The position numbers and the translations under genes were made by a program. A stretch of DNA of 64,000 bases, taken from positions 1-64,000 of IMG/VR virus record IMGVR_UViG_3300033388_007730. One strand, 5' to 3'. Positions 31,101 to 47,877 of this stretch are shown in pieces; within the stretch, counting starts at the first letter, position 1; every line of letters begins with the position of its first letter. Under the pieces are notes generated by a model. It was not told the origin of the DNA and did not search any database. It was given only the letters and a program-made list of their open reading frames with translations.

Positions 31101-33980
31101 TCGTCGCAGATGCCAGCTATTTATCATAAGGGTAGGGTTAATGAGAGTCTTATTCCATTGAAGCTTCCTATGCAGACTTTTGATAATATAGCTTATAGTT
31201 TATCTGAGTCTTATGATGATGAAGATAGAAACAAAATGGGAAATGCTGTTACATTTTATGATATAATTCCTACAGGAGAGAATATTCAATTGTTAGCAGC
31301 TACTAGTAGTGGGATATGGGTTAGCGATGATTTTGGTAATAGTTGGAGTTCGAGGGAAACATTTCCCAATGCTGTTCATAGAGTTTATAGATCTGCTGCT
31401 GGAGATTTTTATGCTATAACAAATTACAATATTTATAAAAGTAATGGAACTAGTTTTCGTTCCTGGAGAAGGATGACGGGACTAGAATATGTTAAAATTA
31501 TTAGAGATATAGATGAAGATAGTAGTGGTAATTTATTCATTAGCACAGATTTAGGAGTGTTTAGATTAAATAGTGAGGAAGTTCCTTATATCCTTGACTC
31601 ATGGGAGAAATTATCTATTTTTGGGGCAAGAAGTAATGAGGCTTATGCAATTATAGTAGATGAAGATTTTGTGTATGGTTCTGAAGGAGGAACAGGAAGA
31701 ATATTAGCTAGTAATGAATTAGGATTGGTAGAATCTGTTGATGATGGCAGTAGTTGGTCATATGTTGGTGATTTAGAATCGAATGTCAAAATAAGAAAAT
31801 TTATTAAGAGTGGTAACTTTACATTCGCTTTGGCAGATAATAAATTATATAGACAAGAAGATAATAATGAAATATTTGATGAGATAGCATCGTTTGATGT
31901 TAATTTATCTAGGAAAATAGAAATATTTAATGAGAAAATTTATATATCTACTGATGATGGAGCTAAAGTTTCTGTTTCACCAAACATTTATACAGATACT
32001 GATATAGAATTTGTTCCTGTTTGGTCTTCTATGAATATAAAGAATGATATCTCTGTAACTACATCATTAAATATTATAGAAGAAATCTTGTTTATAGGAA
32101 CAGATAGAAGATTATTTATATTTGATGAAAATAGTGAAATATGGCTTCAATATGAACAGGTTGGAACAGCAATACCTACATTTTATATTGATGACGTTGT
32201 TCAGAATTTAGGATTTTATTACAATAATGAAGGTGGCAGTCATAATATTCAATTTGATGAGATATTGGCTGCTGATTCATTGGTTAAAGTAGCGAATAAA
32301 TATGATATTTATGTTGCGGAAAGAGGAGGATGGGTAGAAAATAAGTATGATGCTGAATTTCATGTATTCCAAAATGGAGTAGAGTTTGGAAGGTCTAAAG
32401 AATCTATCTCTATTGATGTTAATGAATTTTTAAATCTTACTTTTCCTGATTATACAGATTTAAATTCACATAAAGAGAAAGCAGATTTGTATAAAGCTGA
32501 TTTAGACGAATATCTTAAAAGTGTTGCTACTATTGCAGAGTCGTCTGGTGAAGAAGTTGTTGAACTAATGAAGAATGTGTATAAAAATATAGAATTATTC
32601 TTTTCTCAATTATATTCTTCTCTTACTGATGGTTATATATATCCTTCTGTTAACGCTACTATGATAAAAACTATTAATATATTCTCGAATATTGGAGTGG
32701 TGGAGACACAGGATGTTTCTGTTTATTATGAAGAGAATCAGGATAAAGGAACAGATTATTCAGCTTCAATAAACACAGTAGATGGTTTGGCAACATTTGA
32801 TATACCATTCGATAAATATGACGACTTAACAATAGATATTAAGGGTGTTGGAATTTTAAATTCTGGAGAATTGTTACATAGAGAAGTAGAAGATAATTTT
32901 GAACTTGCATATTCTGGATTCCCATCATATTTGTCACAAGTTCAACAAATCAATATATCAAAACTTGGATTATTTACGGAGAGGCAGTGGGCTGGACAGC
33001 AAGATGAATTAAGCACACCTTATCAAATGAAAAATATAATACCAGTTGATAATAATTGGTATGATACTTTAAATTCTACTATTAATTATTCAGAACAGAG
33101 TGCAGCAGGATCTCCATCATTATCTTTGCAACATGTTACTTCTATATTACATGTTTCGGAGGCAGGTAGTATTTTTGTTGGGGGACAAGGTGGTTGTTTG
33201 TCAATAGATACTGATAATTTAAATATATCAGAAATTGATTTTACAAGCATTGCTGATCAAAGAGTAAGACAGATATTTAGAGAAAATGATAATATATATA
33301 TACTAACTGATAGCTATATTTATTTATCTCAAGATTTTGGAGTTACGTGGGAAGATTATAGTAGAGATGGTCTTCCTAATCAGTTATATTCTATTGGATA
33401 TGTTGGAAATAATTTAGTTATTGGAGCATCGGATGGAATTTATACAAAATCATCATTAGTGTTTGACTGGGATAGATCTGTTGAAACTTCTTCTCCAGTT
33501 ACTGTTATGATGACTTCTAATTTGTTATATGCTGTTGTGAATGGAACAATACAAGGAACTTCTAATGGGTACTCATTCTTTGATACTGGCTTAGGCTCTG
33601 ATTTAGATATAATAGAATTAGTAAGATACAATTATATAAATATGTATGTTGCTACAAAGCAGGGATTGTATTCAGATAATGGTAGTCTTAATAGCACAAA
33701 TCCTGTATTGACAGAAATAGATATTAGTAGTTTCGTAGATGATGATGATACTATTAACGATGTAGCTACTGATGATTTAACGAAAATAATTGTTGGCACT
33801 AGTTCTGGGACTTATGTACTTATAGAAAATGATATCATAAGCGATGGAGGTACTACTTCATTGGATGCTGTGCATAAATTAATTATAGTTAATGATGAAG
33901 TATGGTTATTCGGATATAATTTGTTGAAAGTTCCTTCTCTGAATTATCCGATAAGGTTATCAACTGGAGTACCTATTTAA
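28107..33980 (+). CDS. Giant FN3 + BNR/Asp-box propeller protein (1957 aa)
   Basis: Multiple FN3 repeats (YQIIAIDLSGNES, YFVTSIDIYGNES); Asp-boxes SDDFGNSW, SVDDGSSW, SQDFGVTW. Confidence 0.8.
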   Translation: MPIKTPHYGLEAFGWGDIYSARVDARRFSTIDSQLAFVSDLIGPGVITGWDLTTDSNNRIIASAGMGIIGRNVLKTFGSSEILVDSNSENYIYMKEKSNDVGEISGNSEITSIVGVNLIPPSSPTGLQQESSIISYLAGLGIYDPELITYLKRLLSREDNDDDVEIIGYKEIAFSWDENTEVDLSHYKIVKIDGNSTSDFITTETIYADTNLIQNNDYSYQIIAIDLSGNESSVSEITVRTDVDTRVPLPPTFIETFPGDGSFELIWDASSSDNVNKYEIIIQLLTDSYEIDGSPSTHYVSVIDDLFDSTYAIFTGLNNNRNYRITISSVSLAGIKSESIYVTTKLVFFAGAGEVNSLDVSFEISDFENIGIETDVSWRYLPSNPYLLDAELFLITFIENGTRLSDPIEVLPSVAALASCPDGNDSNGVCYTTHIKYIPFENDGIISYESIKEYTPYIVLIQTKDVDGNISSGFIYRVNRTPVSVKVSSISNFTLTRRTDNTIHLIWDNPEDDYFSYNVINIAITDLSATTFNPSAEEEFTYLDDVRIGRTNEYIIPSSLFNVASRYTTTITSYDIFGTGGGSFQYAHQFTDQLGVIFPPSPGNLLVTAGDSEVNLKWDPIGDEFDVAYYRIYRADYQFYLRSDDFSIINTIPSSLTYFTDFTVSNGSVYNYFVTSIDIYGNESLNPSFYGYISISSFAAEPRSNSSISVAEGLEVNVGSNEVDAELSWTISYGNFDGYEILRSDENNYSFETTGYAFPGDTTFVDQNAILKDNVNYYYMIRKFKNDTTLAITSSSVAPSKSIFIGKVISLNGIITFDTSNVVNLINFEDPIRERTEAKVIIHNHKFENNIDRRIELRSNLIVDSWLTNDFSIYQTVQDIEGATNYVVKISGTVNKDYFTDSKGNVDVTRLRKAQIGESPVEYEIDVNEGIITFNEPLYTTCVPSETSPVVVCPVTPYTSSAPSISLELIGLSEVDGLLVEDKVKSFSATQVSNGLIRSSQMPAIYHKGRVNESLIPLKLPMQTFDNIAYSLSESYDDEDRNKMGNAVTFYDIIPTGENIQLLAATSSGIWVSDDFGNSWSSRETFPNAVHRVYRSAAGDFYAITNYNIYKSNGTSFRSWRRMTGLEYVKIIRDIDEDSSGNLFISTDLGVFRLNSEEVPYILDSWEKLSIFGARSNEAYAIIVDEDFVYGSEGGTGRILASNELGLVESVDDGSSWSYVGDLESNVKIRKFIKSGNFTFALADNKLYRQEDNNEIFDEIASFDVNLSRKIEIFNEKIYISTDDGAKVSVSPNIYTDTDIEFVPVWSSMNIKNDISVTTSLNIIEEILFIGTDRRLFIFDENSEIWLQYEQVGTAIPTFYIDDVVQNLGFYYNNEGGSHNIQFDEILAADSLVKVANKYDIYVAERGGWVENKYDAEFHVFQNGVEFGRSKESISIDVNEFLNLTFPDYTDLNSHKEKADLYKADLDEYLKSVATIAESSGEEVVELMKNVYKNIELFFSQLYSSLTDGYIYPSVNATMIKTINIFSNIGVVETQDVSVYYEENQDKGTDYSASINTVDGLATFDIPFDKYDDLTIDIKGVGILNSGELLHREVEDNFELAYSGFPSYLSQVQQINISKLGLFTERQWAGQQDELSTPYQMKNIIPVDNNWYDTLNSTINYSEQSAAGSPSLSLQHVTSILHVSEAGSIFVGGQGGCLSIDTDNLNISEIDFTSIADQRVRQIFRENDNIYILTDSYIYLSQDFGVTWEDYSRDGLPNQLYSIGYVGNNLVIGASDGIYTKSSLVFDWDRSVETSSPVTVMMTSNLLYAVVNGTIQGTSNGYSFFDTGLGSDLDIIELVRYNYINMYVATKQGLYSDNGSLNSTNPVLTEIDISSFVDDDDTINDVATDDLTKIIVGTSSGTYVLIENDIISDGGTTSLDAVHKLIIVNDEVWLFGYNLLKVPSLNYPIRLSTGVPI

Positions 33981-35568: not shown

Positions 35569-38500
35569 ATGGCAATATTAAATTTAATAGATTATTATAA
35601 AGCTATAAATGGAACATCATCTTTAGAGTCTGGTGTGTGGCATACTAATTTTGATAAGAGACATGCTCTTAAAGTATATTCAGATTTAGAGGCTGTGGAC
35701 GAACATAGTGATACTATGGTGTTATCATCTACACCAAGTTTGACAGAATCTATAGATGTATTTTCTGAAAAATTGGGGCAAAAATTAAATAATACAAAAA
35801 TTACTACTCAAGGTGATGGTAGTGAGATAGTAGAATTAGAATTAGATGATAGAGTTGTAACTTTTATTATTGATCAAAGTGGGAGTATGAGTTGGTCTGA
35901 TAATGGCAATTTTAGGCATGTTATCGCTCAGGATATTGCCGATAAAATTCAAAATAATTATCCAGGAGATATTAAATATAATTTATTAGAATTTGGTTCT
36001 AAATTTGTGAATGTTGTTTTGTTTGGAGTTATAGAGGAGAGCATGGATGCTGATGATCCAAACGTTGTTGAAAACGCTCTTACTATTGATAGTGATGAAA
36101 ATTTTAGAGGCATAAGAGTTGTTAGAACAACTGAAGATATTGATCTTAGTTATAATCCTGCTGGTGGAGATTTAATGTCAGATGGTTTTCTTGGGAAGAT
36201 GTTAGATCAAGACGTAGTGGAAGGAACAACATATTATTACTGGGTTTATACTTATGATGCCAATCTTAGTATGAGTAAAGGAAGAAGAATAAAAGTTACT
36301 CCTAGAGATAGAATTGTTCCTAGAGGAGTTTCTATTTTTAGAAGTTTTGAAAAACATGATGACATAACTAAAGGTCTTCCTTTGATTGGGACAGGTATAT
36401 CTAGAGATGATAATACATTAGGTATATGGCATTTTAATGAGGGTACAGGAACTAATGTATTTGATTTTAGTTCAACTAATGCTGTTTTAAATATAAATGA
36501 TACAGAACCAACATGGTATGATAGTGAATTTGTTCCAACTGGGACTTCGGGAATATATCTGAATGGAGTAAATGATTATGTAAACATTATTGGGCAAACT
36601 GATTTGTATCGTGATTTTGTTACTCAACCAGAACTTACTATTATGGCATGGGTTTTTCCTTATAAAAATACAGGTTTACAAAATATAGTATCATCAACTT
36701 CAGATACTGGTGAAAATTATTATTTTTGTTTCACAAATGAAAAATTAACGTTTTGGGTAGATTCTCCAAATGAAATTTTTAATACAGTTGATGATGTGTT
36801 GGAATTAAATAAATGGCAGCATGTATGTATGACGTACAATCAGGGCGTGGTATCATTTTATCATAACGGCATATTAAGAGACACTATTTCGCCGTTTCCA
36901 TCAGTTCCTGTAGCAGTGTCGGAATATTCTTTTAATATTGGCGTTTCTTCAACTGGTATTGGTTATTTCTACGGAAAGATAACAGAAATTAGTGTTCATG
37001 ATGTTGCTCGTAGTTCTGTTTATATTAATGCTCAATTAACTACTAATTCTATAACTGATAGTGATGGAGTTGAAATTGATACCGAGATTACTGGTATCAA
37101 AGATGATAACGGTGATAGAATCAATGTACTTAGATATGAAGTTTCAGAAGACTATAATTTTATCGGCGGAAATGTAAAGATAGTAAGGAATAATGAAAGA
37201 ATACCTACTTGGGAAGAAGATGGAGAGGATATATTTAATGGAACTGTTGCTCCTGGTATGTATTATGTTGCTGATGTAAATGATTATGTTCTTGGAGACA
37301 ATGTATATTATAGAATATTTTCTCAAAATACTTTGGGTAATTTTAGCTTCGTTTCTGATTCTTTATCTTTAACATTTGAACTTGAAAAACCATCTTCAGA
37401 TGTTGGTTTCCCTACATTAGATTCTGCAATTCCTCCTCCAATTTTAAGAAGTGGTGTTCCGCTTGGGACTGCGGGAAATATGAAGACTGCTATAAAGTGG
37501 GCACAGACTTCTCCAATAGATGATAGGATAAAAAAAGTTAAAATATTTTATTCCAGAACAGGATATCCTACTGTCAATGATGATGGTGGCAGTGATGGAG
37601 AGCTAGTATTTAATGGAACTACTTCTGATAATGTTTTTGTGCATAGAGATTTAGATAATGATGTGGAGGCTTATTATACTATAGTTAATGTTGATAGATA
37701 TGGCAGATCTTCTAATTATGATAGTGATGGAGTCAGAATTCAAGATTTTTTACAGACACTTATTGTCCCAGTAAGTGATGCCGATGATGTCGCTATCCCA
37801 TTAGTAGATGTAGAAAATTTACATTATGAATTAATTGATGATGACTCTGTTAGTGTTATATGGGATCAACCCTCTAAAAATCCTGAAAATATAAGTGCTT
37901 ATTTTGATCAGACTGTTGTAGTGTATACTTCTATTACTGACCAATTTGGTAGTGCTCTTTCAGAAGATACTCTTTTGAAAATGTTCATAAGTTCAGAAAT
38001 AATTAGAGATGATCAAGCTGATGATGTATTTGGTGGCATAGCAGCAGCTGATTTTGAAGATAGAGATGCTTATACTTTTAATGTAATTAGAACAGATGAT
38101 GGTATATTAAAAGCTAGTTTAACTATGACTACTAATACTAGTATAATGGCTAGTGTTAAAGAGGCTACTTTTGAAATTCAAGTAAAAGCATTTGTTCCAA
38201 AAGAGGGATATATTTCTCCTACTAACAACACCACAGTAACGACTCCTTTAGAAGAATATAGTCAAGCTGTTGCAGATTTAATTGATGAAATTGAGGGAGA
38301 AGATACAGTATCTAGTACAGTTACTGGTGAGAATATTTTTGAATATTTTTCTAAAAAAATAACAATTAATTTTACAAATCCTTGGGAAGTAGAGTTAATA
38401 AACAAAGAAAATATGATGGTTTCTGAAAGATGTTATGTTCAAAAAGAAGATGAGATTACGAAAGAAGAATATTTAGTAACTTCTGCCCAATCATTCAATG

Positions 38501-41500
38501 GTATTTATATGAAAGCATCTGCACCATTTATTGCCAGGGCAAAGGTAAAATATAAAGGCAAACCAATCAATACGGGATCTGTACAAATAGCAGTTTGGGA
38601 TGCTGATTCTAATAATCTTTGTAGGAATGCTGGGACAGAAGGTTCTACGCCTTATGAAGGAGAAAAAATACAAGTTAGTACTACTGTTCTTCCTCCAGCT
38701 GGTTCTCTTCCTATTTTATCGGGAGAAGAAGAAATTGAAAGTGGAGGAGAAACAATTGTCATCCCTATATCATATGTTGATATACCATTATATGCTCCTG
38801 ATATGCCACAAGCTGTAAGATTGTTTGTCAAGGGGAGTAGAGCAGGATATGATTCAGTAAAAGATTTGTATATATTATTCCAAAATATATTAAAAATTGA
38901 TATACAAGCTTTTAGTCCAAATGTTGATGGAACTCATTTGGCAGAGCAACAGGCTCAGGTTTACATAGTCCATCCAGATTATCCTAACACGAATTTGCTA
39001 TATGATAGCTCGTTGGTGACGTATCCTGACGATGATACCGTTGTGCAATGGGAAAGTAAACCAATAGAAGGTGATCCTAGAGATATATATTCAATAGATA
39101 ATGTTCCTATCCCAAATGGAATATATTCATATACTAGAAATGGTGTTGCTAGAAATGTATTTATGGGTCCGATTGAAAGAGGGACAGAAAAAATAGATGA
39201 AACGCATGAGATTACAGCAACAGTTGTTTTTAGTGGGCTATCATCTCAAGCTAAACAATTTATATACATAGAATATGAACCTGATGAGTATAATAAATTT
39301 GCAGCAAGATTTTTGATGGAAGTTGATGGAGGGTGGATAGGAGATGGTTTAGATTCTAGATGGGGTGGTGCAGGATGGTTAAATGTTAGAAGTGGATTGT
39401 TGTGGACAGATGGATCTGATTACAGAAGAGTTAAAGTAAGTAGGAATCCTAGAATAGCTGCTAATTCTGATTTTGGTTCTGCCTCATGTTTCAGAGATTG
39501 TGCTAGTCAAGAAGATTCTGAAGTTTTAGAATTAAGTTCAGGACAGATAGTACATATAATTACTGGAGATGATAATTTAGAAATTTTGCACGGAGATATA
39601 ACAGAAGAAACAGATCCATATACAGGGGAGCATACTCTTACTGTTGAAGAAAATGGTTCTATAGCTAATGGAGAGGCTTATATAGAATTAAATGATCAAG
39701 AAGATACAGATATGACATATTTTTATATTAGAGCAAATAAATTTGTACCAAATGCTGGAGGTATTAATCCAGATTATTTACGAGATGAAAATCCCATTAA
39801 TGAATGTTTGTGTTTAAAAGGATCTGCAGGCTTGTTCAAAAAAGATTTGCCTAAATGGGAACCTGTTGTTTATATAAATGGCACTACAACTTTATTTGTT
39901 AATAATAGACCTCTTACTTTAAAAGGAGGAGGAGATTTTTACAATGGAATACCTCCATGTCCAATTGGATTAAGAGAACCATTGAGCATGTCAATTGTTG
40001 ATAGAAGAGTGATTACAAATAATGAAACATTTTGGGTTAATAATGATCAATTTTTAGATTCTGATGGGCATACATTGGTGAAAGATGATTCTGATGTTTT
40101 TGTTAAGGTAAGAATTAATTGGAAAAGAGGAAATGTTCCAGTAGGAACAATAATAAGTGTCTCTGTGGGTGATGGATCGGCTTCTAATTTATTCGTAGCT
40201 AGTCAAGATAGATATTTTGCAGAAATTGATTCAGATGATGGATTTAGTTATGTAACAGTTCAATTAGCAGCTTCTAGAGTGGCAGAATCAACTACTACTG
40301 AAAACATTAGAATATTTTCTGTATATGATGAAAATGGAAAGACAGAAAGAAATGTAGGAGTTGTTGTAAGTTTGACTATAGATAAAGAAAATGAAGATGT
40401 AACAGTAATTACGTCAGGTGTTATTGAAGATGTAGATGCTCCTGTTGAAACTCCTTATTCCAGAACATTGGATAGGTATGATATTTTGTTGAATGAGTGG
40501 AACACTGTTAGTAGCATGTCAGAAAGTAGGGGAGATATGTTTTCTGGTGGTGTAGGAGATTATATTTATGCAATAGGTGGATTGAAGGATAATGACATGA
40601 ATATATCTTCTAGAAATGAGAGATATGATACTGTAACAGATACATGGAGCGATATGGCTACTATGATAACACCTAGGTTTGGAGGATCTTCTATAACAAT
40701 TGGTAATGATATATACACTATTGGAGGAGTAGGTATAGACTCTTCTGAAGGAGGAGAATTAGATGTTAGTATCGCTATGGAAGTTTATCATGCAGATATA
40801 GATGAATGGGAAATTTTGTCAAGTATGCCAATAAACAATCAAGGGGAAGCAGCAGAAGAAAAATTTGGGGTTGCTTTTGGTACTGCTAATGTTGTTTTAG
40901 TTAATAATAATGGTTACATTTATGTGTTATGCGGAGCAAAATCTGTAACCAATGCCAGTGGAGAAGTGAAAGTTGAAGATTATAATAATGTTATTTTAAG
41001 ATATCATATAGAAAATGATTCTTGGGAGATATCAGATGAATTGTATAGTGATGAGATGGCTACTTACGCTAGAATATCTCCATTATCTATATATTATGAA
41101 GATAAGATAATAGTATTTAATGGTGGCGTAGATAATGGAAGTGAAATAGTATTCTTTAATGATGAGTTCACAGTGGATATGGATAGTTCATTAGTTAGAG
41201 TCGTTAATAATAGGTATATTAATTTTGGTAGTGCATTATTTTCCAGTGCATTAGTTCCTAAATATTTATCATCATTTGCTGAATATGATATCAATCCATC
41301 TGATTATGATGCTAATTATTATATTTTGGGAGGATCTAATAATGATTCTTCTAGTTTAGATGTAATGGAAAGAATAATAACATCTTATGATCCTTTTGAT
41401 TATGATAGTTCGTATATAATTAGTGATCCTTCAATACAACTACCAGCATTGCCAACTGCTAAACATGGTGCTAGTGCTGTTTATGCTGAAGCTCTCCGTG

Positions 41501-41589
41501 GATCTGATCTTGTTCCTTACATATATTTAATGGGAGGATATACATCAGCCAAAGGAGAAGATTCAGTAGAGATAACTTTTGATATATAA
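35569..41589 (+). CDS. Giant protein (2006 aa): N-terminal half of a vWA domain, LamG, three FN3-like repeats, C-terminal Kelch propeller
   Basis: VVTFIIDQSGSM (MIDAS DxSxS); LTIMAWV...WQHVCMTY...YHNG...GKITEI LamG; YIYAIGG, IYTIGG and YIYLMGG Kelch blades. Confidence 0.85.
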   Translation: MAILNLIDYYKAINGTSSLESGVWHTNFDKRHALKVYSDLEAVDEHSDTMVLSSTPSLTESIDVFSEKLGQKLNNTKITTQGDGSEIVELELDDRVVTFIIDQSGSMSWSDNGNFRHVIAQDIADKIQNNYPGDIKYNLLEFGSKFVNVVLFGVIEESMDADDPNVVENALTIDSDENFRGIRVVRTTEDIDLSYNPAGGDLMSDGFLGKMLDQDVVEGTTYYYWVYTYDANLSMSKGRRIKVTPRDRIVPRGVSIFRSFEKHDDITKGLPLIGTGISRDDNTLGIWHFNEGTGTNVFDFSSTNAVLNINDTEPTWYDSEFVPTGTSGIYLNGVNDYVNIIGQTDLYRDFVTQPELTIMAWVFPYKNTGLQNIVSSTSDTGENYYFCFTNEKLTFWVDSPNEIFNTVDDVLELNKWQHVCMTYNQGVVSFYHNGILRDTISPFPSVPVAVSEYSFNIGVSSTGIGYFYGKITEISVHDVARSSVYINAQLTTNSITDSDGVEIDTEITGIKDDNGDRINVLRYEVSEDYNFIGGNVKIVRNNERIPTWEEDGEDIFNGTVAPGMYYVADVNDYVLGDNVYYRIFSQNTLGNFSFVSDSLSLTFELEKPSSDVGFPTLDSAIPPPILRSGVPLGTAGNMKTAIKWAQTSPIDDRIKKVKIFYSRTGYPTVNDDGGSDGELVFNGTTSDNVFVHRDLDNDVEAYYTIVNVDRYGRSSNYDSDGVRIQDFLQTLIVPVSDADDVAIPLVDVENLHYELIDDDSVSVIWDQPSKNPENISAYFDQTVVVYTSITDQFGSALSEDTLLKMFISSEIIRDDQADDVFGGIAAADFEDRDAYTFNVIRTDDGILKASLTMTTNTSIMASVKEATFEIQVKAFVPKEGYISPTNNTTVTTPLEEYSQAVADLIDEIEGEDTVSSTVTGENIFEYFSKKITINFTNPWEVELINKENMMVSERCYVQKEDEITKEEYLVTSAQSFNGIYMKASAPFIARAKVKYKGKPINTGSVQIAVWDADSNNLCRNAGTEGSTPYEGEKIQVSTTVLPPAGSLPILSGEEEIESGGETIVIPISYVDIPLYAPDMPQAVRLFVKGSRAGYDSVKDLYILFQNILKIDIQAFSPNVDGTHLAEQQAQVYIVHPDYPNTNLLYDSSLVTYPDDDTVVQWESKPIEGDPRDIYSIDNVPIPNGIYSYTRNGVARNVFMGPIERGTEKIDETHEITATVVFSGLSSQAKQFIYIEYEPDEYNKFAARFLMEVDGGWIGDGLDSRWGGAGWLNVRSGLLWTDGSDYRRVKVSRNPRIAANSDFGSASCFRDCASQEDSEVLELSSGQIVHIITGDDNLEILHGDITEETDPYTGEHTLTVEENGSIANGEAYIELNDQEDTDMTYFYIRANKFVPNAGGINPDYLRDENPINECLCLKGSAGLFKKDLPKWEPVVYINGTTTLFVNNRPLTLKGGGDFYNGIPPCPIGLREPLSMSIVDRRVITNNETFWVNNDQFLDSDGHTLVKDDSDVFVKVRINWKRGNVPVGTIISVSVGDGSASNLFVASQDRYFAEIDSDDGFSYVTVQLAASRVAESTTTENIRIFSVYDENGKTERNVGVVVSLTIDKENEDVTVITSGVIEDVDAPVETPYSRTLDRYDILLNEWNTVSSMSESRGDMFSGGVGDYIYAIGGLKDNDMNISSRNERYDTVTDTWSDMATMITPRFGGSSITIGNDIYTIGGVGIDSSEGGELDVSIAMEVYHADIDEWEILSSMPINNQGEAAEEKFGVAFGTANVVLVNNNGYIYVLCGAKSVTNASGEVKVEDYNNVILRYHIENDSWEISDELYSDEMATYARISPLSIYYEDKIIVFNGGVDNGSEIVFFNDEFTVDMDSSLVRVVNNRYINFGSALFSSALVPKYLSSFAEYDINPSDYDANYYILGGSNNDSSSLDVMERIITSYDPFDYDSSYIISDPSIQLPALPTAKHGASAVYAEALRGSDLVPYIYLMGGYTSAKGEDSVEITFDI

Positions 41590-41599
41590 GGTGATAGTA

Positions 41600-44500
41600 A
41601 TGTCAGAAGAATATAAAACAGTTAAATTAAAATTAGATGGCAAGCAATCTTTGTCTGTACCTGTTGATATAAAGAAAAATGGTAGATATATAACTGAAGA
41701 TGTTGATATTATCGTTAGAGGATTTTTAAAATTTAATGACGAAGCAACAACAGATACAACTTTATATGAAAGTAACAGTTATCAGAGACAATCTGCTAAT
41801 AAATTGGATGACAAAACAGTTGTTCATCCGGTACTTTTCGTATCAAATAGAATAAGAGTTCTTAATGGTAGGGGCGTTTTTACTCTTCTTCCCAGATCAG
41901 AAGATGTTTTAGAGGATACAGAAACTGTTCAAGATAGAGCTGGTTCTGATATAACTGATGATCAGATAGTATCTTCTGGAGGTATATCTAAAGATGAGCA
42001 AATTACAGAACCAAATAGTGATCCAGCTACTATAATAATAGAGACAGGAGAAATTAGAACACCATATAAAATATCTATTGAAATTACTATTGTTCCTCTT
42101 GTTGCTGGGGGATTATATGCTCAGACAATTGATAGAGGAACTAATCCAACAGTAGATGATGACACTAGTGATTCTTCTTTATTCTCAAAATATAAAACGA
42201 GAACAAGTAGTAATTTAGTAGTTGAATGTTTTGGAGAGGACGACTGGGTTCCTGTTATCACACCTATACTCGGAACAAACAATAGCAGTTATGATACTTT
42301 CGTTAGTGAATTAGAAGACTTATCTAACAGTACTCCTATGGGTGCTTCTACATTATATGATGCAATTGTATCTGGTGCTGATATAGTATCTGATAACGAG
42401 ATAGACACTTCAAGAAAAATAATATATACATTTACAGATAATGAATCTAGTGCTTCTACAGCTTCAGCTGATAATGTTATTAATGAAGTAAATAATATTG
42501 ATGGTGTTAAAAATACTCCTTTGATGATTGCTAATATGGCTATTGTAGAACCAGTTACTTTATCTGTCAAAGCTAATACTACAGATACTAGAGATTTAAA
42601 TAAAATGTCATTTGAGACGGGAGGTCAAGCTGTGACAGTAGTATCTGAAGATTTTTTGGATGATATTGTTGGTATATTTTACAGTGAAGCTGTTGGAGCC
42701 ATGGGTTATGGAACATATGAATTTATTGCTGATTTAGGAGAGGAGTCAACAGTAAACAATATTACAGCTTATTTTGATATAACAGTTGATAATGCTAGTG
42801 CTACATGGGAAATTGAAACTAGTATTGATGGGTATAATTACACAGCATTAAATAAGGATTATGTTGCTGATGAGACAGTTGAATTTGCTGATCTTTTAGC
42901 TAGATATATAAAATTTAAAATTATTTTGATAACTGGATTTATTGACACCACTACTCCAAGCCCTTCTATATTTCCTGATTCGCCAGCATTAACTTCTATA
43001 TCTATAGTTTACAACCAGGCTAACATAGCTTATTTGTATTTGAATAAAGAAGAAGAAGATATTATTCCGTATCATATTACTTTAGCTGTTGACTCTAATG
43101 AAATTGCTAATAATGAAATTAGTGTTGGAGTTGCTAAGTCAGATTCTGGCACATGGGCTGATTATTCTACTCCATCTCAATCAATTGTTAACCAGAATGG
43201 CAAGATAGTTATTCCAATAAGATTTTCTCAAGACATTGGAGAATTTCAGCAAGAACCTCTTAATAAGGTTGACAGTTTTACATTGAAAATGGAATATGGT
43301 TCTTTTGATCCATTTGCTACAGTACTCTTATATGATAAAGATGATGAGATAATTACTAGTGATAAGTATAAACTTTATCCTAGAGATGGAGTTGTTGTTC
43401 TATCTTTTGCTGTTGATACTGACTATCAAGATGGTGATTTTAAAATAGGTCTTCTTAATGGAACTGATTACAAAGTTGGACTTAAATTAACCAACAAATC
43501 AGATTCGGAGCAATTATTATTATATGGAGTAGGATATTTATATACTACTGGAAGAGATTTGTTACCACCAGTTACTAAGATTCCTCCAGAAGCAAGTAAT
43601 GTGATTATAACTAATGAAAATCCTAATAGATTTACTATAATGGAAGTTTCTTATACTTATACAGATTCTAATTTTGATCCAGAAGATGAAAGTGCTACTA
43701 GAATAATTTGGTATATTAATGGTTCTTCTATTGATTATTTGGAAGGAGTGAGAAAGTGGAATGATACAACCGATCCATTAGATCCAGTCTATTCTCAAAC
43801 ATCTTTAGAGTATCCAGACAGCGATGATTTAACAGGAGATACAATAGATGTGTGGATTAAGAAACAGGAAGATTCTATATTGCAAGTGAATGATGCGATT
43901 TATTATGAAGTTCAGGTTAGTGACGGAGAATTGTTCGGGGTAAAAGAAAAATCTAGCACTGTTAAAGTAACAGAAGCAATACCTGTATTAAAGAGTCAAA
44001 TTTTTGTAAAGGCTAAAGATGAGAATGGCAATATTGGAGATAGACTTTCTGCTGATAAAATTGCTGTGATATATCCTCCATTAGATGAAATATTTGCTGG
44101 AGATGGAGAGGATGTAAGTGAAATACAATGGATAATAAATGATGTATCATTTAAATCAGGAATTGTAGGAGATGTATCTTCATCTGGAATTCCTATTGAA
44201 GAAATTAGAATTAATGAAATAGGAAATGAAGAGTATACTGATTATGGATTAAGAATTAATAATAGTGTGACGGTTCAAGTGACTCCTAGAACTAGTGGAG
44301 TAGTTGGAGAGATAATCACTAGTAGAACAGTGATAGTAGAAAATTCATTGCCGCGAGTGTATAATGTCGAGTTTGTTGGATCTAGTCATTCAGATAGAAA
44401 TGATTTAGTATTGAGTTGGGATTGGTGGAATTTTGAATCGATTGCCCTTGCTGACACTGACACTACCGGGCAAAAAGATGTTACGACAGTTTCGTGGTTC

Positions 44501-44758
44501 GTAAAAAATCCAGGGGATGATAATTTTACTGAGATTTATAGATTTAATGATCAAACAAATAATCTTGAAGAAACATTTATAGATCCTTTCTATAATGGAA
44601 AAATTACAATTAGTTTAATTAACCACAATTCAATAATATCTTCTAGTGTTTTGTTCGTAGGTCAGAAATGGCAGTGTGTTATCACACCAAATGACACAAT
44701 TGACAATGGGACCACATATACTACCGAAGAAATTACTATCACCGCTTCTGCTAATTAA
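41600..44758 (+). CDS. Large protein: C-terminal half of a vWA domain plus Ig-like repeats
   Basis: G.STLYDAI...RKIIYTFTD...DLNKMSFETGG. Start placed at ATG 41600 behind an AAGGTGA RBS. Confidence 0.75.
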   Translation: MSEEYKTVKLKLDGKQSLSVPVDIKKNGRYITEDVDIIVRGFLKFNDEATTDTTLYESNSYQRQSANKLDDKTVVHPVLFVSNRIRVLNGRGVFTLLPRSEDVLEDTETVQDRAGSDITDDQIVSSGGISKDEQITEPNSDPATIIIETGEIRTPYKISIEITIVPLVAGGLYAQTIDRGTNPTVDDDTSDSSLFSKYKTRTSSNLVVECFGEDDWVPVITPILGTNNSSYDTFVSELEDLSNSTPMGASTLYDAIVSGADIVSDNEIDTSRKIIYTFTDNESSASTASADNVINEVNNIDGVKNTPLMIANMAIVEPVTLSVKANTTDTRDLNKMSFETGGQAVTVVSEDFLDDIVGIFYSEAVGAMGYGTYEFIADLGEESTVNNITAYFDITVDNASATWEIETSIDGYNYTALNKDYVADETVEFADLLARYIKFKIILITGFIDTTTPSPSIFPDSPALTSISIVYNQANIAYLYLNKEEEDIIPYHITLAVDSNEIANNEISVGVAKSDSGTWADYSTPSQSIVNQNGKIVIPIRFSQDIGEFQQEPLNKVDSFTLKMEYGSFDPFATVLLYDKDDEIITSDKYKLYPRDGVVVLSFAVDTDYQDGDFKIGLLNGTDYKVGLKLTNKSDSEQLLLYGVGYLYTTGRDLLPPVTKIPPEASNVIITNENPNRFTIMEVSYTYTDSNFDPEDESATRIIWYINGSSIDYLEGVRKWNDTTDPLDPVYSQTSLEYPDSDDLTGDTIDVWIKKQEDSILQVNDAIYYEVQVSDGELFGVKEKSSTVKVTEAIPVLKSQIFVKAKDENGNIGDRLSADKIAVIYPPLDEIFAGDGEDVSEIQWIINDVSFKSGIVGDVSSSGIPIEEIRINEIGNEEYTDYGLRINNSVTVQVTPRTSGVVGEIITSRTVIVENSLPRVYNVEFVGSSHSDRNDLVLSWDWWNFESIALADTDTTGQKDVTTVSWFVKNPGDDNFTEIYRFNDQTNNLEETFIDPFYNGKITISLINHNSIISSSVLFVGQKWQCVITPNDTIDNGTTYTTEEITITASAN

Positions 44759-44805: not shown

Positions 44806-45516
44806 ATGAAAAATCTAAATGTTGTAATCTTAACACACAATGAAATTGATACTATAAAAAAATGTCTAAAAGCATTATGCACTTACACAAAAAATTTTAA
44901 TTTAGTTGTGATAGAAAATACTTCTACTGATGGAACTGAGCAATTTTTGTCAAGAGTTGAAAATGAATATGTGAATATTACAGTAGAATTTAATAAAGAG
45001 AATAATGGAGTTATTGAGGGAAGGAATCAGGGTTATTCTATTGCCCAAAAAAAATATCCAGATGCTGAATATGTTATGTTTATAGATTGCGACCAGGAAG
45101 TTTTACCAGGATGGCAAGAGAGTTATATGAATCTATTTGATCAAAAATATGATTTGATCGGTTGTGAAGCCTGGAAAATGAGAAAAAAAGATTTTTATCC
45201 TGAAAGAAAAGTGTCATGCTCAATAGACTCATTTAGTTATATCGGGGCGGGAGGGATGATGGTTAAAAATAGTGTTATAGAAGATATAGGATTGTTTGAT
45301 GAGAGATATGAGAAGTATTATTGGGAAGATCCTAGTTTTTGCTTCAGAGCACATCAAGCAGGATATAAGATAGGTTGGAATTATAAAAGTTCAATAATTC
45401 ATCAAAAGCATAATTTATCTTTAAGTGGAGATAGAAAAAAATATTTTATGAAGAACTGGAAGAAATTTCAGGAGAAGTGGAAAGGATACGAGATCCCAGT
45501 TCTTAAGATGGATTAA
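44806..45516 (+). CDS. Glycosyltransferase family 2
   Basis: VVILTHN...VIENTSTDGT...GRNQG...FIDCD (DxD)...IGLFDERY..YWED. Confidence 0.9.
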   Translation: MKNLNVVILTHNEIDTIKKCLKALCTYTKNFNLVVIENTSTDGTEQFLSRVENEYVNITVEFNKENNGVIEGRNQGYSIAQKKYPDAEYVMFIDCDQEVLPGWQESYMNLFDQKYDLIGCEAWKMRKKDFYPERKVSCSIDSFSYIGAGGMMVKNSVIEDIGLFDERYEKYYWEDPSFCFRAHQAGYKIGWNYKSSIIHQKHNLSLSGDRKKYFMKNWKKFQEKWKGYEIPVLKMD

Positions 45517-46109
45517 TAATCTTTAGCATCTAATTTTCCGTATTCTTCTTCGAACTCTTTATGAAACTTATCAGACGCTCTTCTCTCCAATCTAATATCT
45601 AGACAAATATTCCCAAGAAGAGCATCTAAATCTATAAAATCATAATCAGGATCTGGTTTTTCAGAATCTCTAGATACAAACTGTATCTCTACCTTTCCCT
45701 TCTTAGATTTATTCCAATTATCAAAATAAGTAAAACCTTGCTCATATAAAATGTTATATAACAATTTACTAATATCACATAAACTAAGTTCTGCTATACC
45801 ATGACTCCCCCAATCAATCTCTTTTTCCAGGCAAGCGTCAAGATATTTAATTACATCTTCTAAATTATCAGGACAAGGATAAGGAGATTGAGAAACAGCA
45901 GCTTTTGCTAACCCTTTCGTTATCTCTGTTTTAAATGTCCATTTCTTATCTAACCACTCAGAATCACCATCATGTCTTCTCTCATGAGGCTTAGGTGTAT
46001 TCTGAATTGCTTTACTCAACTCATTCATACATGCCTCATTAAGAAATCCCTCTTCTGTCATAAGAGGTTGTGATAGCATTTCTATATTTTTAAATGGATC
46101 TTTTTTCAT
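45513..46109 (-). CDS. Hypothetical protein (198 aa)
   Basis: GAGGA RBS; normal coding composition. Confidence 0.75.
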   Translation of the reverse strand: MKKDPFKNIEMLSQPLMTEEGFLNEACMNELSKAIQNTPKPHERRHDGDSEWLDKKWTFKTEITKGLAKAAVSQSPYPCPDNLEDVIKYLDACLEKEIDWGSHGIAELSLCDISKLLYNILYEQGFTYFDNWNKSKKGKVEIQFVSRDSEKPDPDYDFIDLDALLGNICLDIRLERRASDKFHKEFEEEYGKLDAKDY

Positions 46110-46174
46110 AACTATTCCTCTCTAATTAAATAGAATCAATTTCATCACGATATTTTTTAAGTTTTTCAGAAACA

Positions 46175-46510
46175 TTATAAGGAGAGATATTCTTTTTTTT
46201 TACTAATTTCTATATCTACCGCTGCAAAAATATATTTTCTAATATCTATAAGTCCTCCATTAATTATATCTATCCACTTTTTATTATACATTATTTCATC
46301 ACCACTTAAAATAGCATAATATCGTATAGGAATATTTACTAATACTTTTATAATACAATTTTTTATATTGCGAATAATTGCCCCTCCATGTTCTTCAGGA
46401 GTAGGCATAATAAAATATCTCGTTATAATATCTTCTCCTTCTTCTATATTGATTTCTGTATTAGCATGATATGGTTTGGGTTCAACTAAAATATTAATTT
46501 CTTTTTGCAT
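46175..46510 (-). CDS. Hypothetical protein (111 aa)
   Basis: Lies in the minus-strand operon. Confidence 0.65.
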   Translation of the reverse strand: MQKEINILVEPKPYHANTEINIEEGEDIITRYFIMPTPEEHGGAIIRNIKNCIIKVLVNIPIRYYAILSGDEIMYNKKWIDIINGGLIDIRKYIFAAVDIEISKKKEYLSL

Positions 46511-46515
46511 AATTT

Positions 46516-46671
46516 TTATTCCCTTTCCTCTCTAATCCTTTTTAACATTAACTCTCTCAACATTACACTGATTGTTTTTTGTTCTTCTTCACAAATTTTT
46601 ACAAATTCTTTGTAAAAAGATGGTTTCACAATAAATTGTATTATTCTATCATTTTTTTCTTTTTTAGTCAT
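46516..46671 (-). CDS. Ribbon-helix-helix (CopG/Arc-like) DNA-binding protein, 51 aa, absent from the ORF track
   Basis: Translated by hand: MTKKEKNDRIIQFIVKPSFYKEFVKICEEEQKTISVMLRELMLKRIREERE. Beta strand (IQFIV), helix A, then T-I-S...LRELM helix B; AGAGGA RBS. Confidence 0.75.
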   Translation of the reverse strand: MTKKEKNDRIIQFIVKPSFYKEFVKICEEEQKTISVMLRELMLKRIREERE

Positions 46672-46700
46672 ATTATTCCTCTGGGGTGAAGAAATAAATG

Positions 46701-46945
46701 TTAAAAATTCTCCTTATTAACTGTATCAATAATAAATTCTAAAATCTCATCTCTTCCTTCTAATATTGTTTCAACAACTTTTGTCCATTATCATTTTCGT
46801 GAACAACTCCTATGATATGTCCATAACCTCCATAGTGTCCTTTATCTGCGTGTTCTTGCATTTTCTCCGGACTTTCTATATCATTTGTTCCTAATCCGCT
46901 TGGATCGTACTAGCATCTTATAATTTGTCATTTTGATGTATCCAT
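46701..46945 (-). pseudogene. Disrupted small gene (two in-frame stops and a frameshift)
   Basis: MDTSK*QIIRC*YDPSGLGTNDIESPEKMQEHADKGHYGGYGHIIGVVHEND, then a shift to WTKVVETILEGRDEILEFIIDTVNKENF*. ATG overlaps the upstream stop (TAATG). Confidence 0.55.
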
Positions 46946-47239
46946 TAGTCTATCTCCATCAATTCAAATCTTGTAATTATTATTTCAGGTTCATTACTCA
47001 ATATTCTATTTATATTTACAATTTCTATTTCTTTTATAATATCTTCTGTTTTTTCATGAATTTTTATAATTTTTTTTACATTTTTTTTAGATTCTTTTAG
47101 TGTCATTTTTTTTTATTGTTGAATTATTCCTATCTCTAACAGACCATGTATCGTCTTTTGACATTTTAATGAAGTAGTCCCATCCATCTATAATTGTGTA
47201 ATTAAATTGATATCTTATTATATATTTTTTTTCGCTCAT
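46945..47239 (-). pseudogene. Small gene frameshifted at an A9 tract; C-terminus carries the RFELMEID tag
   Basis: MSEKKYIIRY...NNSTIKK, then a shift at 47106-47114 to MTLKESKK...EPEIIITRFELMEID*. Removing one A restores one ORF. Confidence 0.6.
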
Positions 47240-47565
47240 AATTCCATCAACTCAAATATAGATATAGGTTCTCTGTTTAGAAATTCTTTTTCTTCTCGCT
47301 CTTTTAGCTTTAACTTTGTTATATTTATTTGGCTACCATCTTTATTAAACTTATACCAACTTTCTTCACCATATAGATTTTTGTAATGTGCTTCTGTCCA
47401 TTTGTTTTCTTCATTGTATCCATATCAGGCTTCACGACCGATAGAATTTCTAACATGAATTAGATGACTATTCTTATTATACTTCCACCAGTATATTAGA
47501 TCATTAGGCTCTTCACGATAAATAAGATTCCCTTTTTCATCATGTTTTTCTATCTCTTCATTCAT
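47236..47565 (-). pseudogene. YD-like repeat protein with an in-frame TGA; C-terminal tag SIFELMEL
   Basis: MNEEIEKHDEKGNLIYRE...GREA*YGYNEEN...FLNREPISIFELMEL*. The TGA at 47425-47427 sits where paralog 49009 has W (EAWYKY). Confidence 0.75.
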
Positions 47566-47831: not shown

Positions 47832-47839
47832 AGTCTGCC

Positions 47840-47868
47840 ATTCTACCACAAAAATTGCTAAATGTCAA
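47840..47868 (-). promoter_or_regulatory. Near-consensus sigma70 promoter TTGACA-17-TAGAAT with extended -10
   Basis: -35 at 47863-47868, -10 at 47840-47845, 8 nt upstream of ATG 47831. Confidence 0.8.
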
Positions 47869-47877
47869 GAATAAATG

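What the first reader, a model, noticed from the sequence alone, without database searches (positions are those of the whole stretch)
35854..42700. vWA/MIDAS domain apparently split between two adjacent giant genes
Seen: the 2006-aa protein has only the first elements of a vWA fold (VVTFIIDQSGSM, a helix, YNLLEFG; about 35854-36000) before switching to FN3/LamG/Kelch modules. The missing remainder (ELEDL...GASTLYDAI, RKIIYTFTD, LMIANM, DLNKMSFETGG; about 42240-42700) lies in the next gene, which has no DxSxS in front of it. Known: MIDAS needs DxSxS plus a later T and D. Inference: a metal-binding vWA domain rebuilt in trans as an inter-subunit clasp, or fission of an ancestral protein with more than 2000 aa inserted in one vWA loop.
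Basis: partly seen in the sequence, partly recalled or inferred. Interest (0 to 1): 0.7.

Follow-up and report, generated by a model that had tools for sequence, protein, structure and literature searches.

The report
VWA metal-site domain split between two genes
In this uncultivated huge phage, one von Willebrand-A metal-binding domain is encoded in two pieces on two adjacent giant genes, the pieces are predicted to snap together into one complete domain, and in many relatives the same pieces sit 1,500-2,900 residues apart in a single protein.

Summary

- **Gene 1** (35569-41589, 2006 aa) has only strand A, the DxSGS motif, helix 1 and strand B of a VWA fold, at residues 93-143.
- **Gene 2** (41600-44758, 1052 aa) has the rest, from strand C on, at residues about 206-362. 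This includes the other two MIDAS residues, S250 and D280.
- **Conservation:** all five MIDAS positions are essentially invariant across the family: D102 88/88, S104 87/88, S106 88/88, S250 170/172, D280 172/172.
- **Co-folding:** the pieces are predicted to co-fold with ipSAE 0.85 against a best control of 0.00. The contacts are those a VWA sheet requires: strand A beside strand D, and strand B beside strand C.
- **Relatives:** about 60 representative relatives of 2277 aa or more carry both halves in one chain, 1535-2883 residues apart. None has them closer.
- **Evolution:** single-chain forms occur in every major clade, and two-gene forms arose repeatedly at different linkers.

The domain is therefore a discontinuous VWA with a roughly 2,000-residue insertion near the strand B-C turn. 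In this phage the break between the two genes lies inside that insertion, so the domain must be rebuilt in trans.

The biological role is inferred, not shown. It is probably an adhesin-like virion surface or fibre protein.

The parts
35569..41589 (+). Gene 1, 2006 aa (P0061). Order of parts: N-terminal segment, VWA N-half, FN3-like, LamG, beta-rich repeats, Kelch propeller.
   Evidence: ORF; translation; Pfam LamG 351-483, Kelch 1628-1873, VWA_2 98-149; AF2 of residues 1-500
35662..35838 (+). Gene 1 residues 32-90. This N-terminal segment has low confidence on its own and is predicted to pack against the CBM32-like domain and Ig-like domain of gene 2.
   Evidence: pLDDT 40-60 alone; interface residues 32-90 in the complex model
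35845..35997 (+). VWA N-half, gene 1 residues 93-143: strand A (95-102), DxSGS loop, helix 1 (112-130), strand B (135-142).
   Evidence: Pfam VWA_2 positions 2-52; AF2 secondary structure; contacts with gene 2 strands D and C
35872..35886 (+). MIDAS motif D102-Q-S104-G105-S106.
   Evidence: D 88/88, S104 87/88, G 88/88, S106 88/88 in family members
36109..36303 (+). FN3-like beta-sandwich, gene 1 residues 181-245. This is the first domain of the roughly 2,000-residue insertion.
   Evidence: AF2 strands 181-243 at pLDDT 70-85; conserved YYY motif
36415..37038 (+). LamG / concanavalin-like domain, gene 1 residues about 283-490.
   Evidence: Pfam Laminin_G_3, E 3.6e-19; AF2 pLDDT about 90
40450..41187 (+). 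Kelch beta-propeller, gene 1 residues 1628-1873.
   Evidence: Pfam Kelch_6, Kelch_1 and Beta-prop_ATRN-LZTR1
41587..41602 (+). Gene junction: TAA stop of gene 1 (41587-41589), Shine-Dalgarno-like AAGGTGA (41588-41594), ATG of gene 2 (41600). Gene 2 is in the +1 frame relative to gene 1.
   Evidence: Sequence. The same kind of junction occurs in L002, L009, L010 and the P0010 locus, with gaps of 1-10 nt. Fused relatives have a 5-22 aa linker here.
41600..44758 (+). Gene 2, 1052 aa (P0001). Order of parts: Ig-like domain, linker, VWA C-part, CBM32-like domain, beta-sandwich repeats.
   Evidence: ORF; translation; AF2 of residues 1-490; 59 close homologues of about 1010-1060 aa
41600..42094 (+). 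Ig-like (Big-type) domain, gene 2 residues 1-165.
   Evidence: AF2 strands; Big_7 or Big_1 hits in family members
42215..42685 (+). VWA C-part, gene 2 residues 206-362: extra strand 206-212, strand C (about 217-224), helices 231-242 and 252-263, strand D 275-279, helix 290-298, strand E 308-313, helices 321-339, strand F 343-347, helix 350-361.
   Evidence: AF2; VIA-align Z 10-12 to ITIH1, CR3 I-domain, Rpn10 and BatB from strand C on; Foldseek VWA hits; all Atlas feature hits are VWA
42347..42349 (+). Ser250, at the MIDAS Thr position in the G-x-S motif.
   Evidence: G248 172/172; S250 170/172, with T in the other 2
42437..42439 (+). Asp280, the MIDAS Asp after strand D (T-D-N).
   Evidence: D 172/172; residue 278 touches gene 1 residue 102 in the complex model
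42695..43033 (+). CBM32 / F5-8 type C-like jelly roll, gene 2 residues about 366-478.
   Evidence: VIA-align Z about 8 to CBM32 modules; F5_F8_type_C in 26 of 55 family members

Best explanation
The two adjacent genes encode the two parts of one discontinuous VWA/MIDAS domain.

**How the domain is built**
- Gene 1 supplies strand A, the D102-x-S104-G-S106 loop, helix 1 and strand B.
- Gene 2 supplies strand C, the Ser250 loop, strand D with Asp280, and strands E and F with their helices.
- After translation the pieces assemble by fold complementation into one six-stranded sheet, in the order C(g2)-B(g1)-A(g1)-D(g2)-E(g2)-F(g2).
- The single metal site is lined by residues from both chains.
- The N-terminal about 90 residues of gene 1 also pack on the CBM32-like domain of gene 2.
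- The result is a 3,058-residue heterodimer equivalent to the single-chain proteins of many relatives.

**How it arose**
- In those relatives the polypeptide leaves the VWA fold near the strand B-C turn.
- It then runs through about 1,500-2,900 residues of FN3, LamG, beta-sandwich, Kelch and Ig modules and returns to finish the fold.
- In this phage's clade, a stop codon, a ribosome-binding site and a start codon arose in the Kelch-Ig linker inside that insertion.

**Shown versus inferred**
- Shown: the complementary halves, their conservation, the single-chain relatives and the repeated switching between one-gene and two-gene forms.
- Predicted: the co-fold and the shared metal site.
- Inferred: that the complex is an adhesin-like virion surface or fibre component, and that the MIDAS face binds a ligand or stabilises the clasp.
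For: **The halves are complementary.**
- Gene 1 matches Pfam VWA_2 positions 2-52. The L002 orthologue of gene 2 matches positions 56-106.
- The AF2 model of gene 2 aligns to solved VWA domains only from strand C on, at Z 10-12.
- AF2 of gene 1 residues 1-500 shows only strand, helix and strand at 95-142 before FN3 and LamG.
- Family HMMs find no C-part in gene 1 and no N-half in gene 2.
- The 219-kb record holds exactly one of each and no whole VWA.

**The MIDAS positions are conserved.** Counts are D102 88/88, S104 87/88, G105 88/88, S106 88/88, G248 172/172, S250 170/172 and D280 172/172.

**The halves co-fold in prediction.**
- ipSAE was 0.85, 0.86 and 0.83, against a best control of 0.00.
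- The tool's calibration mark was reached by 58 of 80 solved complexes and 2 of 110 mismatched pairs.
- The three runs share at least 65% of their contacts.
- The pLDDT of the gene 1 fragment (the tool's 'partner' chain) is 64-65, against 48 when gene 2 is replaced by an unrelated protein.
- The lowest-error contacts are g1 96-102 with g2 274-278, and g1 136-140 with g2 221-224 and 229-238.

**Single-chain relatives exist.**
- All hits of 2277 aa or more, about 60 representatives, hold both halves 1535-2883 residues apart.
- Fused forms occur in every major clade (52 of 102 rows), and split forms arose repeatedly.
- Fused relatives bridge the window's junction with a 5-22 aa linker.

**The gene break is real.**
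- 59 clusters of about 1010-1060 aa share it.
- Gene 2 has its own Shine-Dalgarno-like site.
- Gene 1 and gene 2 are adjacent in five loci, with gaps of 1-10 nt and differing frames.

**Covariation (suggestive only).** The top inter-half pair is T98-T251 (z 5.3). Several high pairs link the gene 1 segment 136-152 to gene 2 residues 206-224.
Against: - No experiment supports any of this. The co-fold score is the model's own confidence, and a familiar fold could be reassembled from memory.
- The calibration of the complex tool did not include user alignments or a riding metal ion.
- Both monomer models are only moderately confident: mean pLDDT 68.7 and 71.2.
- Neither half reaches Pfam's gathering score in the window's own proteins.
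- Profile searches against PDB sequences found nothing significant.
- Covariation rests on about 65 effective sequences and is confounded by phylogeny.
- No virion hallmark gene was found in the 219-kb fragment, so the structural or adhesin role is unsupported by context.
- Some two-gene 'representatives' in the tree may be fragments or gene-calling breaks.
Confidence: 0.77

Rival explanations
1. The halves pair between different molecules rather than one-to-one. In this reading the N-half of one chain completes the C-part of a neighbouring chain, giving domain-swapped dimers, rings or head-to-tail chains. The two-gene form would then be a special case of that assembly.
For: - The halves are 1,500-2,900 residues apart in cis, so intermolecular pairing is sterically as easy as intramolecular pairing.
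- The trans form in this clade shows that pairing between separate chains is viable.
Against: - In the two-gene form each chain has only one half, so only 1:1 pairs can form and polymers cannot.
- One-gene and two-gene forms interchange repeatedly within clades. This is simplest if the stoichiometry and geometry are the same 1:1 closure.
- No oligomer prediction was run.
Confidence: 0.1
2. The gene 2 VWA-like region is self-sufficient. Its own strands (153-165 or 206-212) would fill the places of strands A and B, with no metal site. The beta-alpha-beta piece of gene 1 would then do something unrelated or bind another partner.
For: - The AF2 monomer model of gene 2 folds with moderate confidence without gene 1.
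- It contains an extra strand, 206-212, just before strand C.
Against: - Invariance of S250 and D280 in gene 2, and of DxSGS in gene 1, is hard to explain unless they share one metal site.
- Solved VWA domains align to the monomer model only from residue 218 on. Nothing in gene 2 is matched to strand A, helix 1 or strand B.
- The confidence of both chains rises when they are modelled together.
- The two halves always co-occur, in one chain or in adjacent genes.
Confidence: 0.07
3. The two-gene arrangement is an artefact or is bypassed. A sequencing error could have split one gene, or a programmed +1 frameshift could make a single 3,058-aa protein.
For: - Gene 2 lies in the +1 frame in four of five loci, and the genes are 1-10 nt apart.
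- Single-chain relatives exist.
Against: - The same break is present in 59 clusters at 90% identity from independent samples and assemblers. All start with a conserved Met-x-x-E-Y-K head.
- A Shine-Dalgarno-like site precedes the ATG.
- The spacing differs between loci, and one locus is in the +2 frame.
- No conserved slippery sequence was seen.
Confidence: 0.03
4. The two VWA-like pieces are decayed relics of one or two former domains. They no longer act together and are retained only as linkers in giant modular proteins.
For: - Neither piece passes Pfam's threshold in the window's proteins.
- The flanking segments are poorly predicted.
Against: - All five MIDAS positions and several structural glycines are near-invariant across sequences that are otherwise only 25-50% identical.
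- The co-fold prediction with clean controls is strong.
Confidence: 0.03

Closest known systems
Integrin beta-subunit beta-I (I-like) VWA domain, e.g. beta3 (6bxb, 3ze2) and beta7/beta8
   Same: - VWA fold with a MIDAS site; these structures are hits of the gene 2 model.
- The beta-I domain is itself nested in another domain (the hybrid domain).
- From my own knowledge, it carries its specificity-determining loop as an insertion in the strand B-C region. That is the same region where this family's insertion leaves the fold.
- The loop contacts ligand next to the MIDAS (PMC12422189).
   Different: - The integrin insertion is a loop of a few tens of residues in one chain.
- Here it is 1,535-2,883 residues of whole domains, and in this phage it is cut by a gene boundary, so the fold is made of two polypeptides.
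Inter-alpha-inhibitor heavy chain 1 VWA domain (6fpy) and classical I-domains such as CR3 (1jlm)
   Same: - These are the best structural matches to gene 2 residues 218-365: Z 12.3 and 10.7, rmsd 2.2-2.7 A.
- The MIDAS layout is DxSxS, then Thr/Ser, then Asp.
   Different: - They are contiguous single-chain domains.
- Their first 45-55 residues (strand A, helix 1, strand B) have no counterpart in gene 2.
Gram-positive pilus tip adhesins with a VWA domain, e.g. SpaC (6m3y); RrgA from my own knowledge
   Same: - A VWA/MIDAS adhesin domain embedded among Ig-like modules, with inserted arms near the MIDAS face.
- SpaC is a structural hit, Z 8.8.
- These are multi-domain surface adhesins, which suggests the likely role here.
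   Different: - The inserted arms are small and the domain is single-chain.
- They are sortase-assembled bacterial pili, not phage proteins.
Single-chain members of the same family (P0085 3163 aa, P0100 3060 aa, P0093 2459 aa, and about 60 representatives in all)
   Same: - The same N-half and C-part, the same invariant MIDAS residues, the same LamG/Kelch/Ig/CBM32 order and the same synteny with glycosyltransferases.
   Different: - They are one polypeptide, so the VWA closes in cis around the insertion.
- P0085 also has an extra complete VWA at residues 2104-2290, which ten other fused relatives lack.
Donor-strand complementation in chaperone-usher pili (from my own knowledge)
   Same: - A fold left incomplete in one subunit is completed by a strand from another subunit, giving a very stable non-covalent link.
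   Different: - There a single strand completes an Ig fold and drives polymerisation.
- Here a strand-helix-strand unit completes an alpha/beta VWA fold, and a metal site is shared across the seam.

Membership tests
VWA / MIDAS domain superfamily | Alpha/beta Rossmann-like fold with a six-stranded sheet in the order C-B-A-D-E-F | tested here: met
   - Met only by the two chains together, and only in prediction.
- Gene 2 residues 218-365 superpose on VWA strands C to F, Z 10-12.
- In the complex model, gene 1 strand A lies against gene 2 strand D and gene 1 strand B lies against gene 2 strand C.
VWA / MIDAS domain superfamily | DxSxS motif after strand A | tested here: met
   D102-Q-S104-G-S106 in gene 1. 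Counts are D 88/88, S104 87/88 and S106 88/88.
VWA / MIDAS domain superfamily | MIDAS Thr in the loop before helix 3 | tested here: inconclusive
   The aligned position is Ser250 in a G-x-S motif: S in 170 of 172 members and T in 2. Ser can donate the same hydroxyl, but metal coordination was not measured.
VWA / MIDAS domain superfamily | MIDAS Asp after strand D | tested here: met
   D280 in T-D-N, 172/172.
VWA / MIDAS domain superfamily | Score above the curated threshold of a VWA profile | tested here: not met
   - Gene 1 scores 20.8 bits on VWA_2 against a cut-off of 27, and only over positions 2-52.
- Gene 2 has no Pfam VWA hit.
- 6 of 55 family members have weak VWA_2 hits.
- This is expected for half-domains.
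VWA / MIDAS domain superfamily | Domain contained in one contiguous stretch of one polypeptide | tested here: not met
   The halves are in two genes here. In single-chain relatives they are 1535-2883 residues apart, and no relative has them closer.
VWA / MIDAS domain superfamily | Binds a divalent cation at the MIDAS | not testable with these tools
   Mg was included in the complex job, but small molecules are not scored.
Phage tail fibre / receptor-binding proteins | Homology to a known fibre or baseplate family, or location in a tail module | tested here: not met
   - PHROGs returns only unknown-function families.
- No sheath, Baseplate_J or terminase was found in the 219-kb fragment.
- There is no match in GenBank phages.
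- The adhesin-like role rests on domain content only: LamG, Kelch, FN3, Ig and CBM32.

The most novel reading that the evidence does not exclude
A natural split-domain system.
- One MIDAS metal ion would be coordinated by residues from two different polypeptides.
- Metal occupancy would then gate the assembly or release of a 3,000-residue receptor-binding complex of a huge phage.
- In the single-chain relatives, the host VWA domain would carry one of the largest domain insertions known, 1.5-2.9 thousand residues, emerging beside the ligand-binding face.
Probability: 0.35. Interest if true: 0.75.

Novelty: new variant of a known kind. Interest (0 to 1): 0.62.

Why it matters
VWA/MIDAS domains are among the best studied adhesion modules, in integrins, complement, pili and anthrax toxin receptors. 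They are treated as autonomous, contiguous folding units.

- This large, previously undescribed family has 211 representative clusters at 50% identity. In it, the fold tolerates a roughly 2,000-residue multi-domain insertion.
- The fold can also be cut into two genes without losing any MIDAS residue.
- If the composite domain is confirmed, it would be a natural example of fold complementation with a shared metal site.
- It would be a clean case study of repeated gene fission and fusion inside a domain.
- It could be a starting point for metal-dependent split-protein tools.
- It also shows how the giant surface proteins of uncultivated huge phages may be tied together.

Tried and rejected
- **Sequence searches against PDB.** phmmer of each fragment and hmmsearch of both family profiles gave only chance hits.
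- **hhalign against a whole VWA.** Each family profile was compared with the one complete VWA found in relative P0085. The results were uninformative: 11-12 aligned columns and probability below 1%.
- **GenBank phage collection.** No match by DNA or by protein.
- **PHROGs and NCBIfam.** Nothing beyond Kelch-type similarities.
- **Promoter and terminator scan of 33.8-45.2 kb.** No more sites than in shuffled sequence, and no terminator between the two genes.
- **Virion hallmark searches in the 219-kb record.** Negative for sheath, Baseplate_J and terminase.
- **The extra whole VWA in P0085.** I considered that it might be the general partner of the C-part. I rejected this because ten other single-chain relatives lack it.
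- **The neighbouring giant genes (1941 and 1957 aa).** I considered that they might be a second split pair. They share no similarity with each other and show no VWA signal.
- **P0142 (5031 aa).** Its contig could not be looked up because the protein exceeds the tool's length limit.
- **Covariation.** The result is weakly in favour but underpowered.

Full report
**Setting**

The window is the first 64 kb of a 219-kb IMG/VR virus record that CheckV rates as 44% complete. It has about 31% G+C, and nearly all its genes are on the + strand. It carries huge-phage style cargo: IF3, a DnaB-like helicase, an AAA ATPase and PRPP synthetase. Related contigs reach 300-550 kb.

The finding concerns two adjacent ORFs:
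- Gene 1: 35569-41589, 2006 aa.
- Gene 2: ATG at 41600 to 44758, 1052 aa. An upstream in-frame TTG at 41579 is probably not the start.

**Observation**

Gene 1 reads VVTFIIDQSGSM at residues 96-107, which is window 35854 onward.
- Pfam VWA_2 matches only profile positions 2-52 of 107, at residues 98-149, below the curated threshold.
- A six-frame scan of the whole record finds the same single place.
- LamG (351-483) and Kelch (1628-1873) follow.
- AF2 of residues 1-500, with a 50-row alignment, gives strand 95-102, helix 112-130 and strand 135-142.
- It then gives a disordered stretch to residue 177, an FN3-like sandwich (181-245) and a confident LamG.
- So gene 1 has only strand A, helix 1 and strand B of a VWA fold.

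Gene 2 has no Pfam VWA hit.
- Its orthologue in locus L002 matches VWA_2 positions 56-106, the exact complement of the gene 1 match.
- AF2 of gene 2 residues 1-490, with a 55-row alignment, gives an Ig-like domain, a linker and an alpha/beta region at 206-362. A CBM32-like jelly roll follows.
- Foldseek's best hits include VWA domains.
- VIA-align superposes model residues 218-365 on ITIH1, the CR3 I-domain, Rpn10, BatB and others at Z 10-12 and rmsd 2.2-2.7 A.
- In every case the superposition starts only at strand C of the target. Examples are 1jlm 178-316 and 2x5n 58-189.
- So gene 2 lacks strand A, helix 1 and strand B.

Family HMMs confirm that gene 1 has no C-part and gene 2 has no N-half. 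The 219-kb record has one of each and no whole VWA. A literal DTSDS occurs at gene 2 residues 188-192. It is in an unconserved, low-confidence linker.

**Conservation**

In 88 N-half sequences: D102 88/88, S104 87/88, G105 88/88, S106 88/88, W109 88/88 and D111 88/88.

In 172 C-part sequences: G248 172/172, S250 170/172 (T in the other two), D280 172/172, and T340 and G342 nearly invariant.

These are the five canonical MIDAS positions, with Ser in place of Thr, divided three and two between the pieces. The surrounding sequence is only 25-50% identical. The simplest reading is a single working metal site.

**Co-fold test**

I ran one complex prediction with gene 2 residues 1-490, a Mg ion and gene 1 residues 1-270, using the family alignments.
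- ipSAE was 0.85, 0.86 and 0.83 in three runs, against 0.00 for the best of three controls.
- The tool's mark was reached by 58 of 80 solved complexes and 2 of 110 mismatched pairs in its calibration. These counts hold only roughly here, because my own alignments and a metal ion were used.
- The runs share at least 65% of their contacts.
- The pLDDT of the gene 1 fragment (the tool's 'partner' chain) is 64-65, and falls to 48 when gene 2 is replaced by an unrelated protein.
- The lowest-error contacts are gene 1 96-102 with gene 2 274-278, which is strand A beside strand D.
- The next are gene 1 136-140 with gene 2 221-224 and 229-238, which is strand B beside strand C and helix 2.
- Residue 102 touches residue 278.
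- This is the canonical C-B-A-D-E-F sheet, with strands A and B donated by gene 1.
- Gene 1 residues 32-90 also contact the CBM32-like domain of gene 2.

This is a prediction, and a familiar fold may be reassembled from memory.

A mutual-information analysis of 69 paired sequences (effective number 65) puts T98-T251 on top (z 5.3). It also links gene 1 residues 136-152 with gene 2 residues 206-224. That is suggestive at best.

**Relatives**

Word-based searches found the following.
- 59 gene 2 clusters of about 1010-1060 aa, plus one Kelch-plus-gene-2 protein of 1483 aa.
- 34 gene 1 homologues. One, P0085 (3163 aa), is a complete fusion. Two, P0093 and P0094 (about 2459 aa), also hold both halves in one chain.

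An exhaustive profile search with the gene 2 alignment found 211 representatives at 50% identity.
- Local HMMs show that every hit of 2277 aa or more, about 60 proteins, has both halves in one chain.
- The gap between the halves is 1535-2883 residues, and none is closer.
- Shorter forms break at other linkers. One example is the break before the Kelch propeller, as in L003. There the upstream 1261-aa gene carries the DQSGSMTWND motif of the N-half.

In a tree of the shared region:
- Single-chain forms occur in all major clades, in 52 of 102 rows.
- Well-supported branches force at least 8 changes of state.
- The window's clade has 18 two-gene representatives and 3 single-chain ones.

A tree of gene 1 homologues rooted on L003 puts the single-chain P0085 and P0093/P0094 outside a clade of 31 two-gene forms. 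Long-branch caveats apply.

Single-chain relatives bridge the window's stop and restart with a 5-22 residue linker. The most economical history is a single-chain ancestor with repeated fissions, and some re-fusions, at inter-domain linkers. The root is uncertain, so this is an inference.

**Is the gene break real?**

- The stop (41587-41589) is followed by AAGGTGA and, 5 nt later, the ATG.
- The same break, with stop-to-ATG gaps of 1-10 nt, is seen in L002, L009, L010 and the P0010 locus. Four are in the +1 frame and one in the +2 frame.
- Gene 1 and gene 2 are adjacent in all of these loci, and a GT2 glycosyltransferase follows.
- No terminator lies between the genes.
- An artefact or an obligatory frameshift is therefore unlikely.

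**Mechanism**

Translation gives two chains. The strand-helix-strand unit of gene 1 inserts between strands C and D of gene 2. This completes the hydrophobic core and brings D102, S104 and S106 next to S250 and D280, so that one cation can be bound across the seam.

The roughly 1,900 residues of gene 1 after strand B, together with the Ig domain and linker of gene 2, form a loop closed by this clasp. In single-chain relatives the closure is in cis.

From general knowledge of the VWA fold, the strand B-C turn lies on the MIDAS face. It is also where the integrin beta-I domain carries its specificity-determining loop. The inserted LamG, Kelch and Ig modules would therefore surround the ligand-binding face.

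The domain content (FN3, LamG, Kelch, Ig, CBM32) and the flanking glycosyltransferases suggest a surface adhesin or fibre of the virion. Nothing in PHROGs, GenBank phages or the local gene context proves it.

**Comparison and novelty**

- By fold and motifs this is a VWA/MIDAS domain. It fails two family expectations: contiguity in one chain and the profile threshold.
- Structurally the closest matches are ITIH1 and the integrin I and beta-I domains. Functionally the most similar are the VWA tip adhesins of Gram-positive pili.
- The principle of completing a fold in trans recalls donor-strand complementation.
- The phrase 'split VWA' occurs in none of about 8.4 million full texts searched. I know of no VWA domain built from two polypeptides or one carrying an insertion of this size. 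That last statement is from memory, not a test.
- I rate it a new variant of a known kind, of moderate to high interest.

Noticed in passing
window 55136-55648: A complete translation initiation factor IF3 gene (IF3_N plus IF3_C domains) is encoded by the phage. It lies beside an AAA ATPase (55688-57346), a DnaB-like helicase (58021-59706) and a PRPP synthetase (61087-62073).
   Followed up: no
window 6718-7698: An HNH homing-type endonuclease ORF sits among the giant genes (PHROG 559, E 1.6e-28).
   Followed up: no
window 45513-48000: Two minus-strand ORFs (45513-46109 and 46175-46510) lie in an otherwise all-plus-strand window. G+C drops to 27.7% and GC skew reverses at 46-48 kb. This may be a small inserted cassette.
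   Followed up: no
window 42161-42175 (gene 2 residues 188-192): A literal DTSDS string, which fits the DxSxS pattern, lies in the acidic, Ser-rich linker before the VWA C-part. It is not conserved in homologues and has pLDDT below 50, so it is a chance match and not a second MIDAS motif.
   Followed up: yes
P0085 residues 2104-2290 (locus L005): One single-chain relative carries an additional complete VWA domain (PF00092, with its own DASTS motif) between the Ig domain and the VWA C-part. Ten other single-chain relatives lack it.
   Followed up: partly
window 35662-35838 with 42695-43054: The complex model also places gene 1 residues 32-90 against the CBM32-like domain of gene 2 (residues 368-485). 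The clasp may therefore be larger than the VWA domain alone. Both segments are poorly predicted on their own.
   Followed up: partly
window 36000-36030 with 42215-42235: Covariation links gene 1 residues 141-152 (just after strand B) with gene 2 residues 206-224: V147-L206, E141-L206 and F152-L224, at z 4.1-4.6. The chain's exit from the VWA fold and its return to it may pair as a two-stranded neck. The test is underpowered.
   Followed up: partly
L005 21427-21492 and window 52668-54200: In relative L005 the downstream ResIII/DEAD helicase gene carries an intein (Hint and Intein_splicing hits, 902 aa). The window's copy is 510 aa without one.
   Followed up: no
window 7719-8819, 44806-45516, 47933-49012, 49811-50545: Four glycosyltransferase genes flank the giant-gene block. 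The order giant gene, GT2, GT1 is conserved in L005, L007, L009 and L010. This hints that the giant proteins or the host surface are glycosylated.
   Followed up: no
window 22277-33980: Two further giant genes (1941 and 1957 aa) lie just upstream. They are not paralogues of each other and have almost no family matches: one fn3 hit, and one Reg_prop hit just over its cut-off (21.9 bits vs 20.4) with no stretch that passes on its own.
   Followed up: partly
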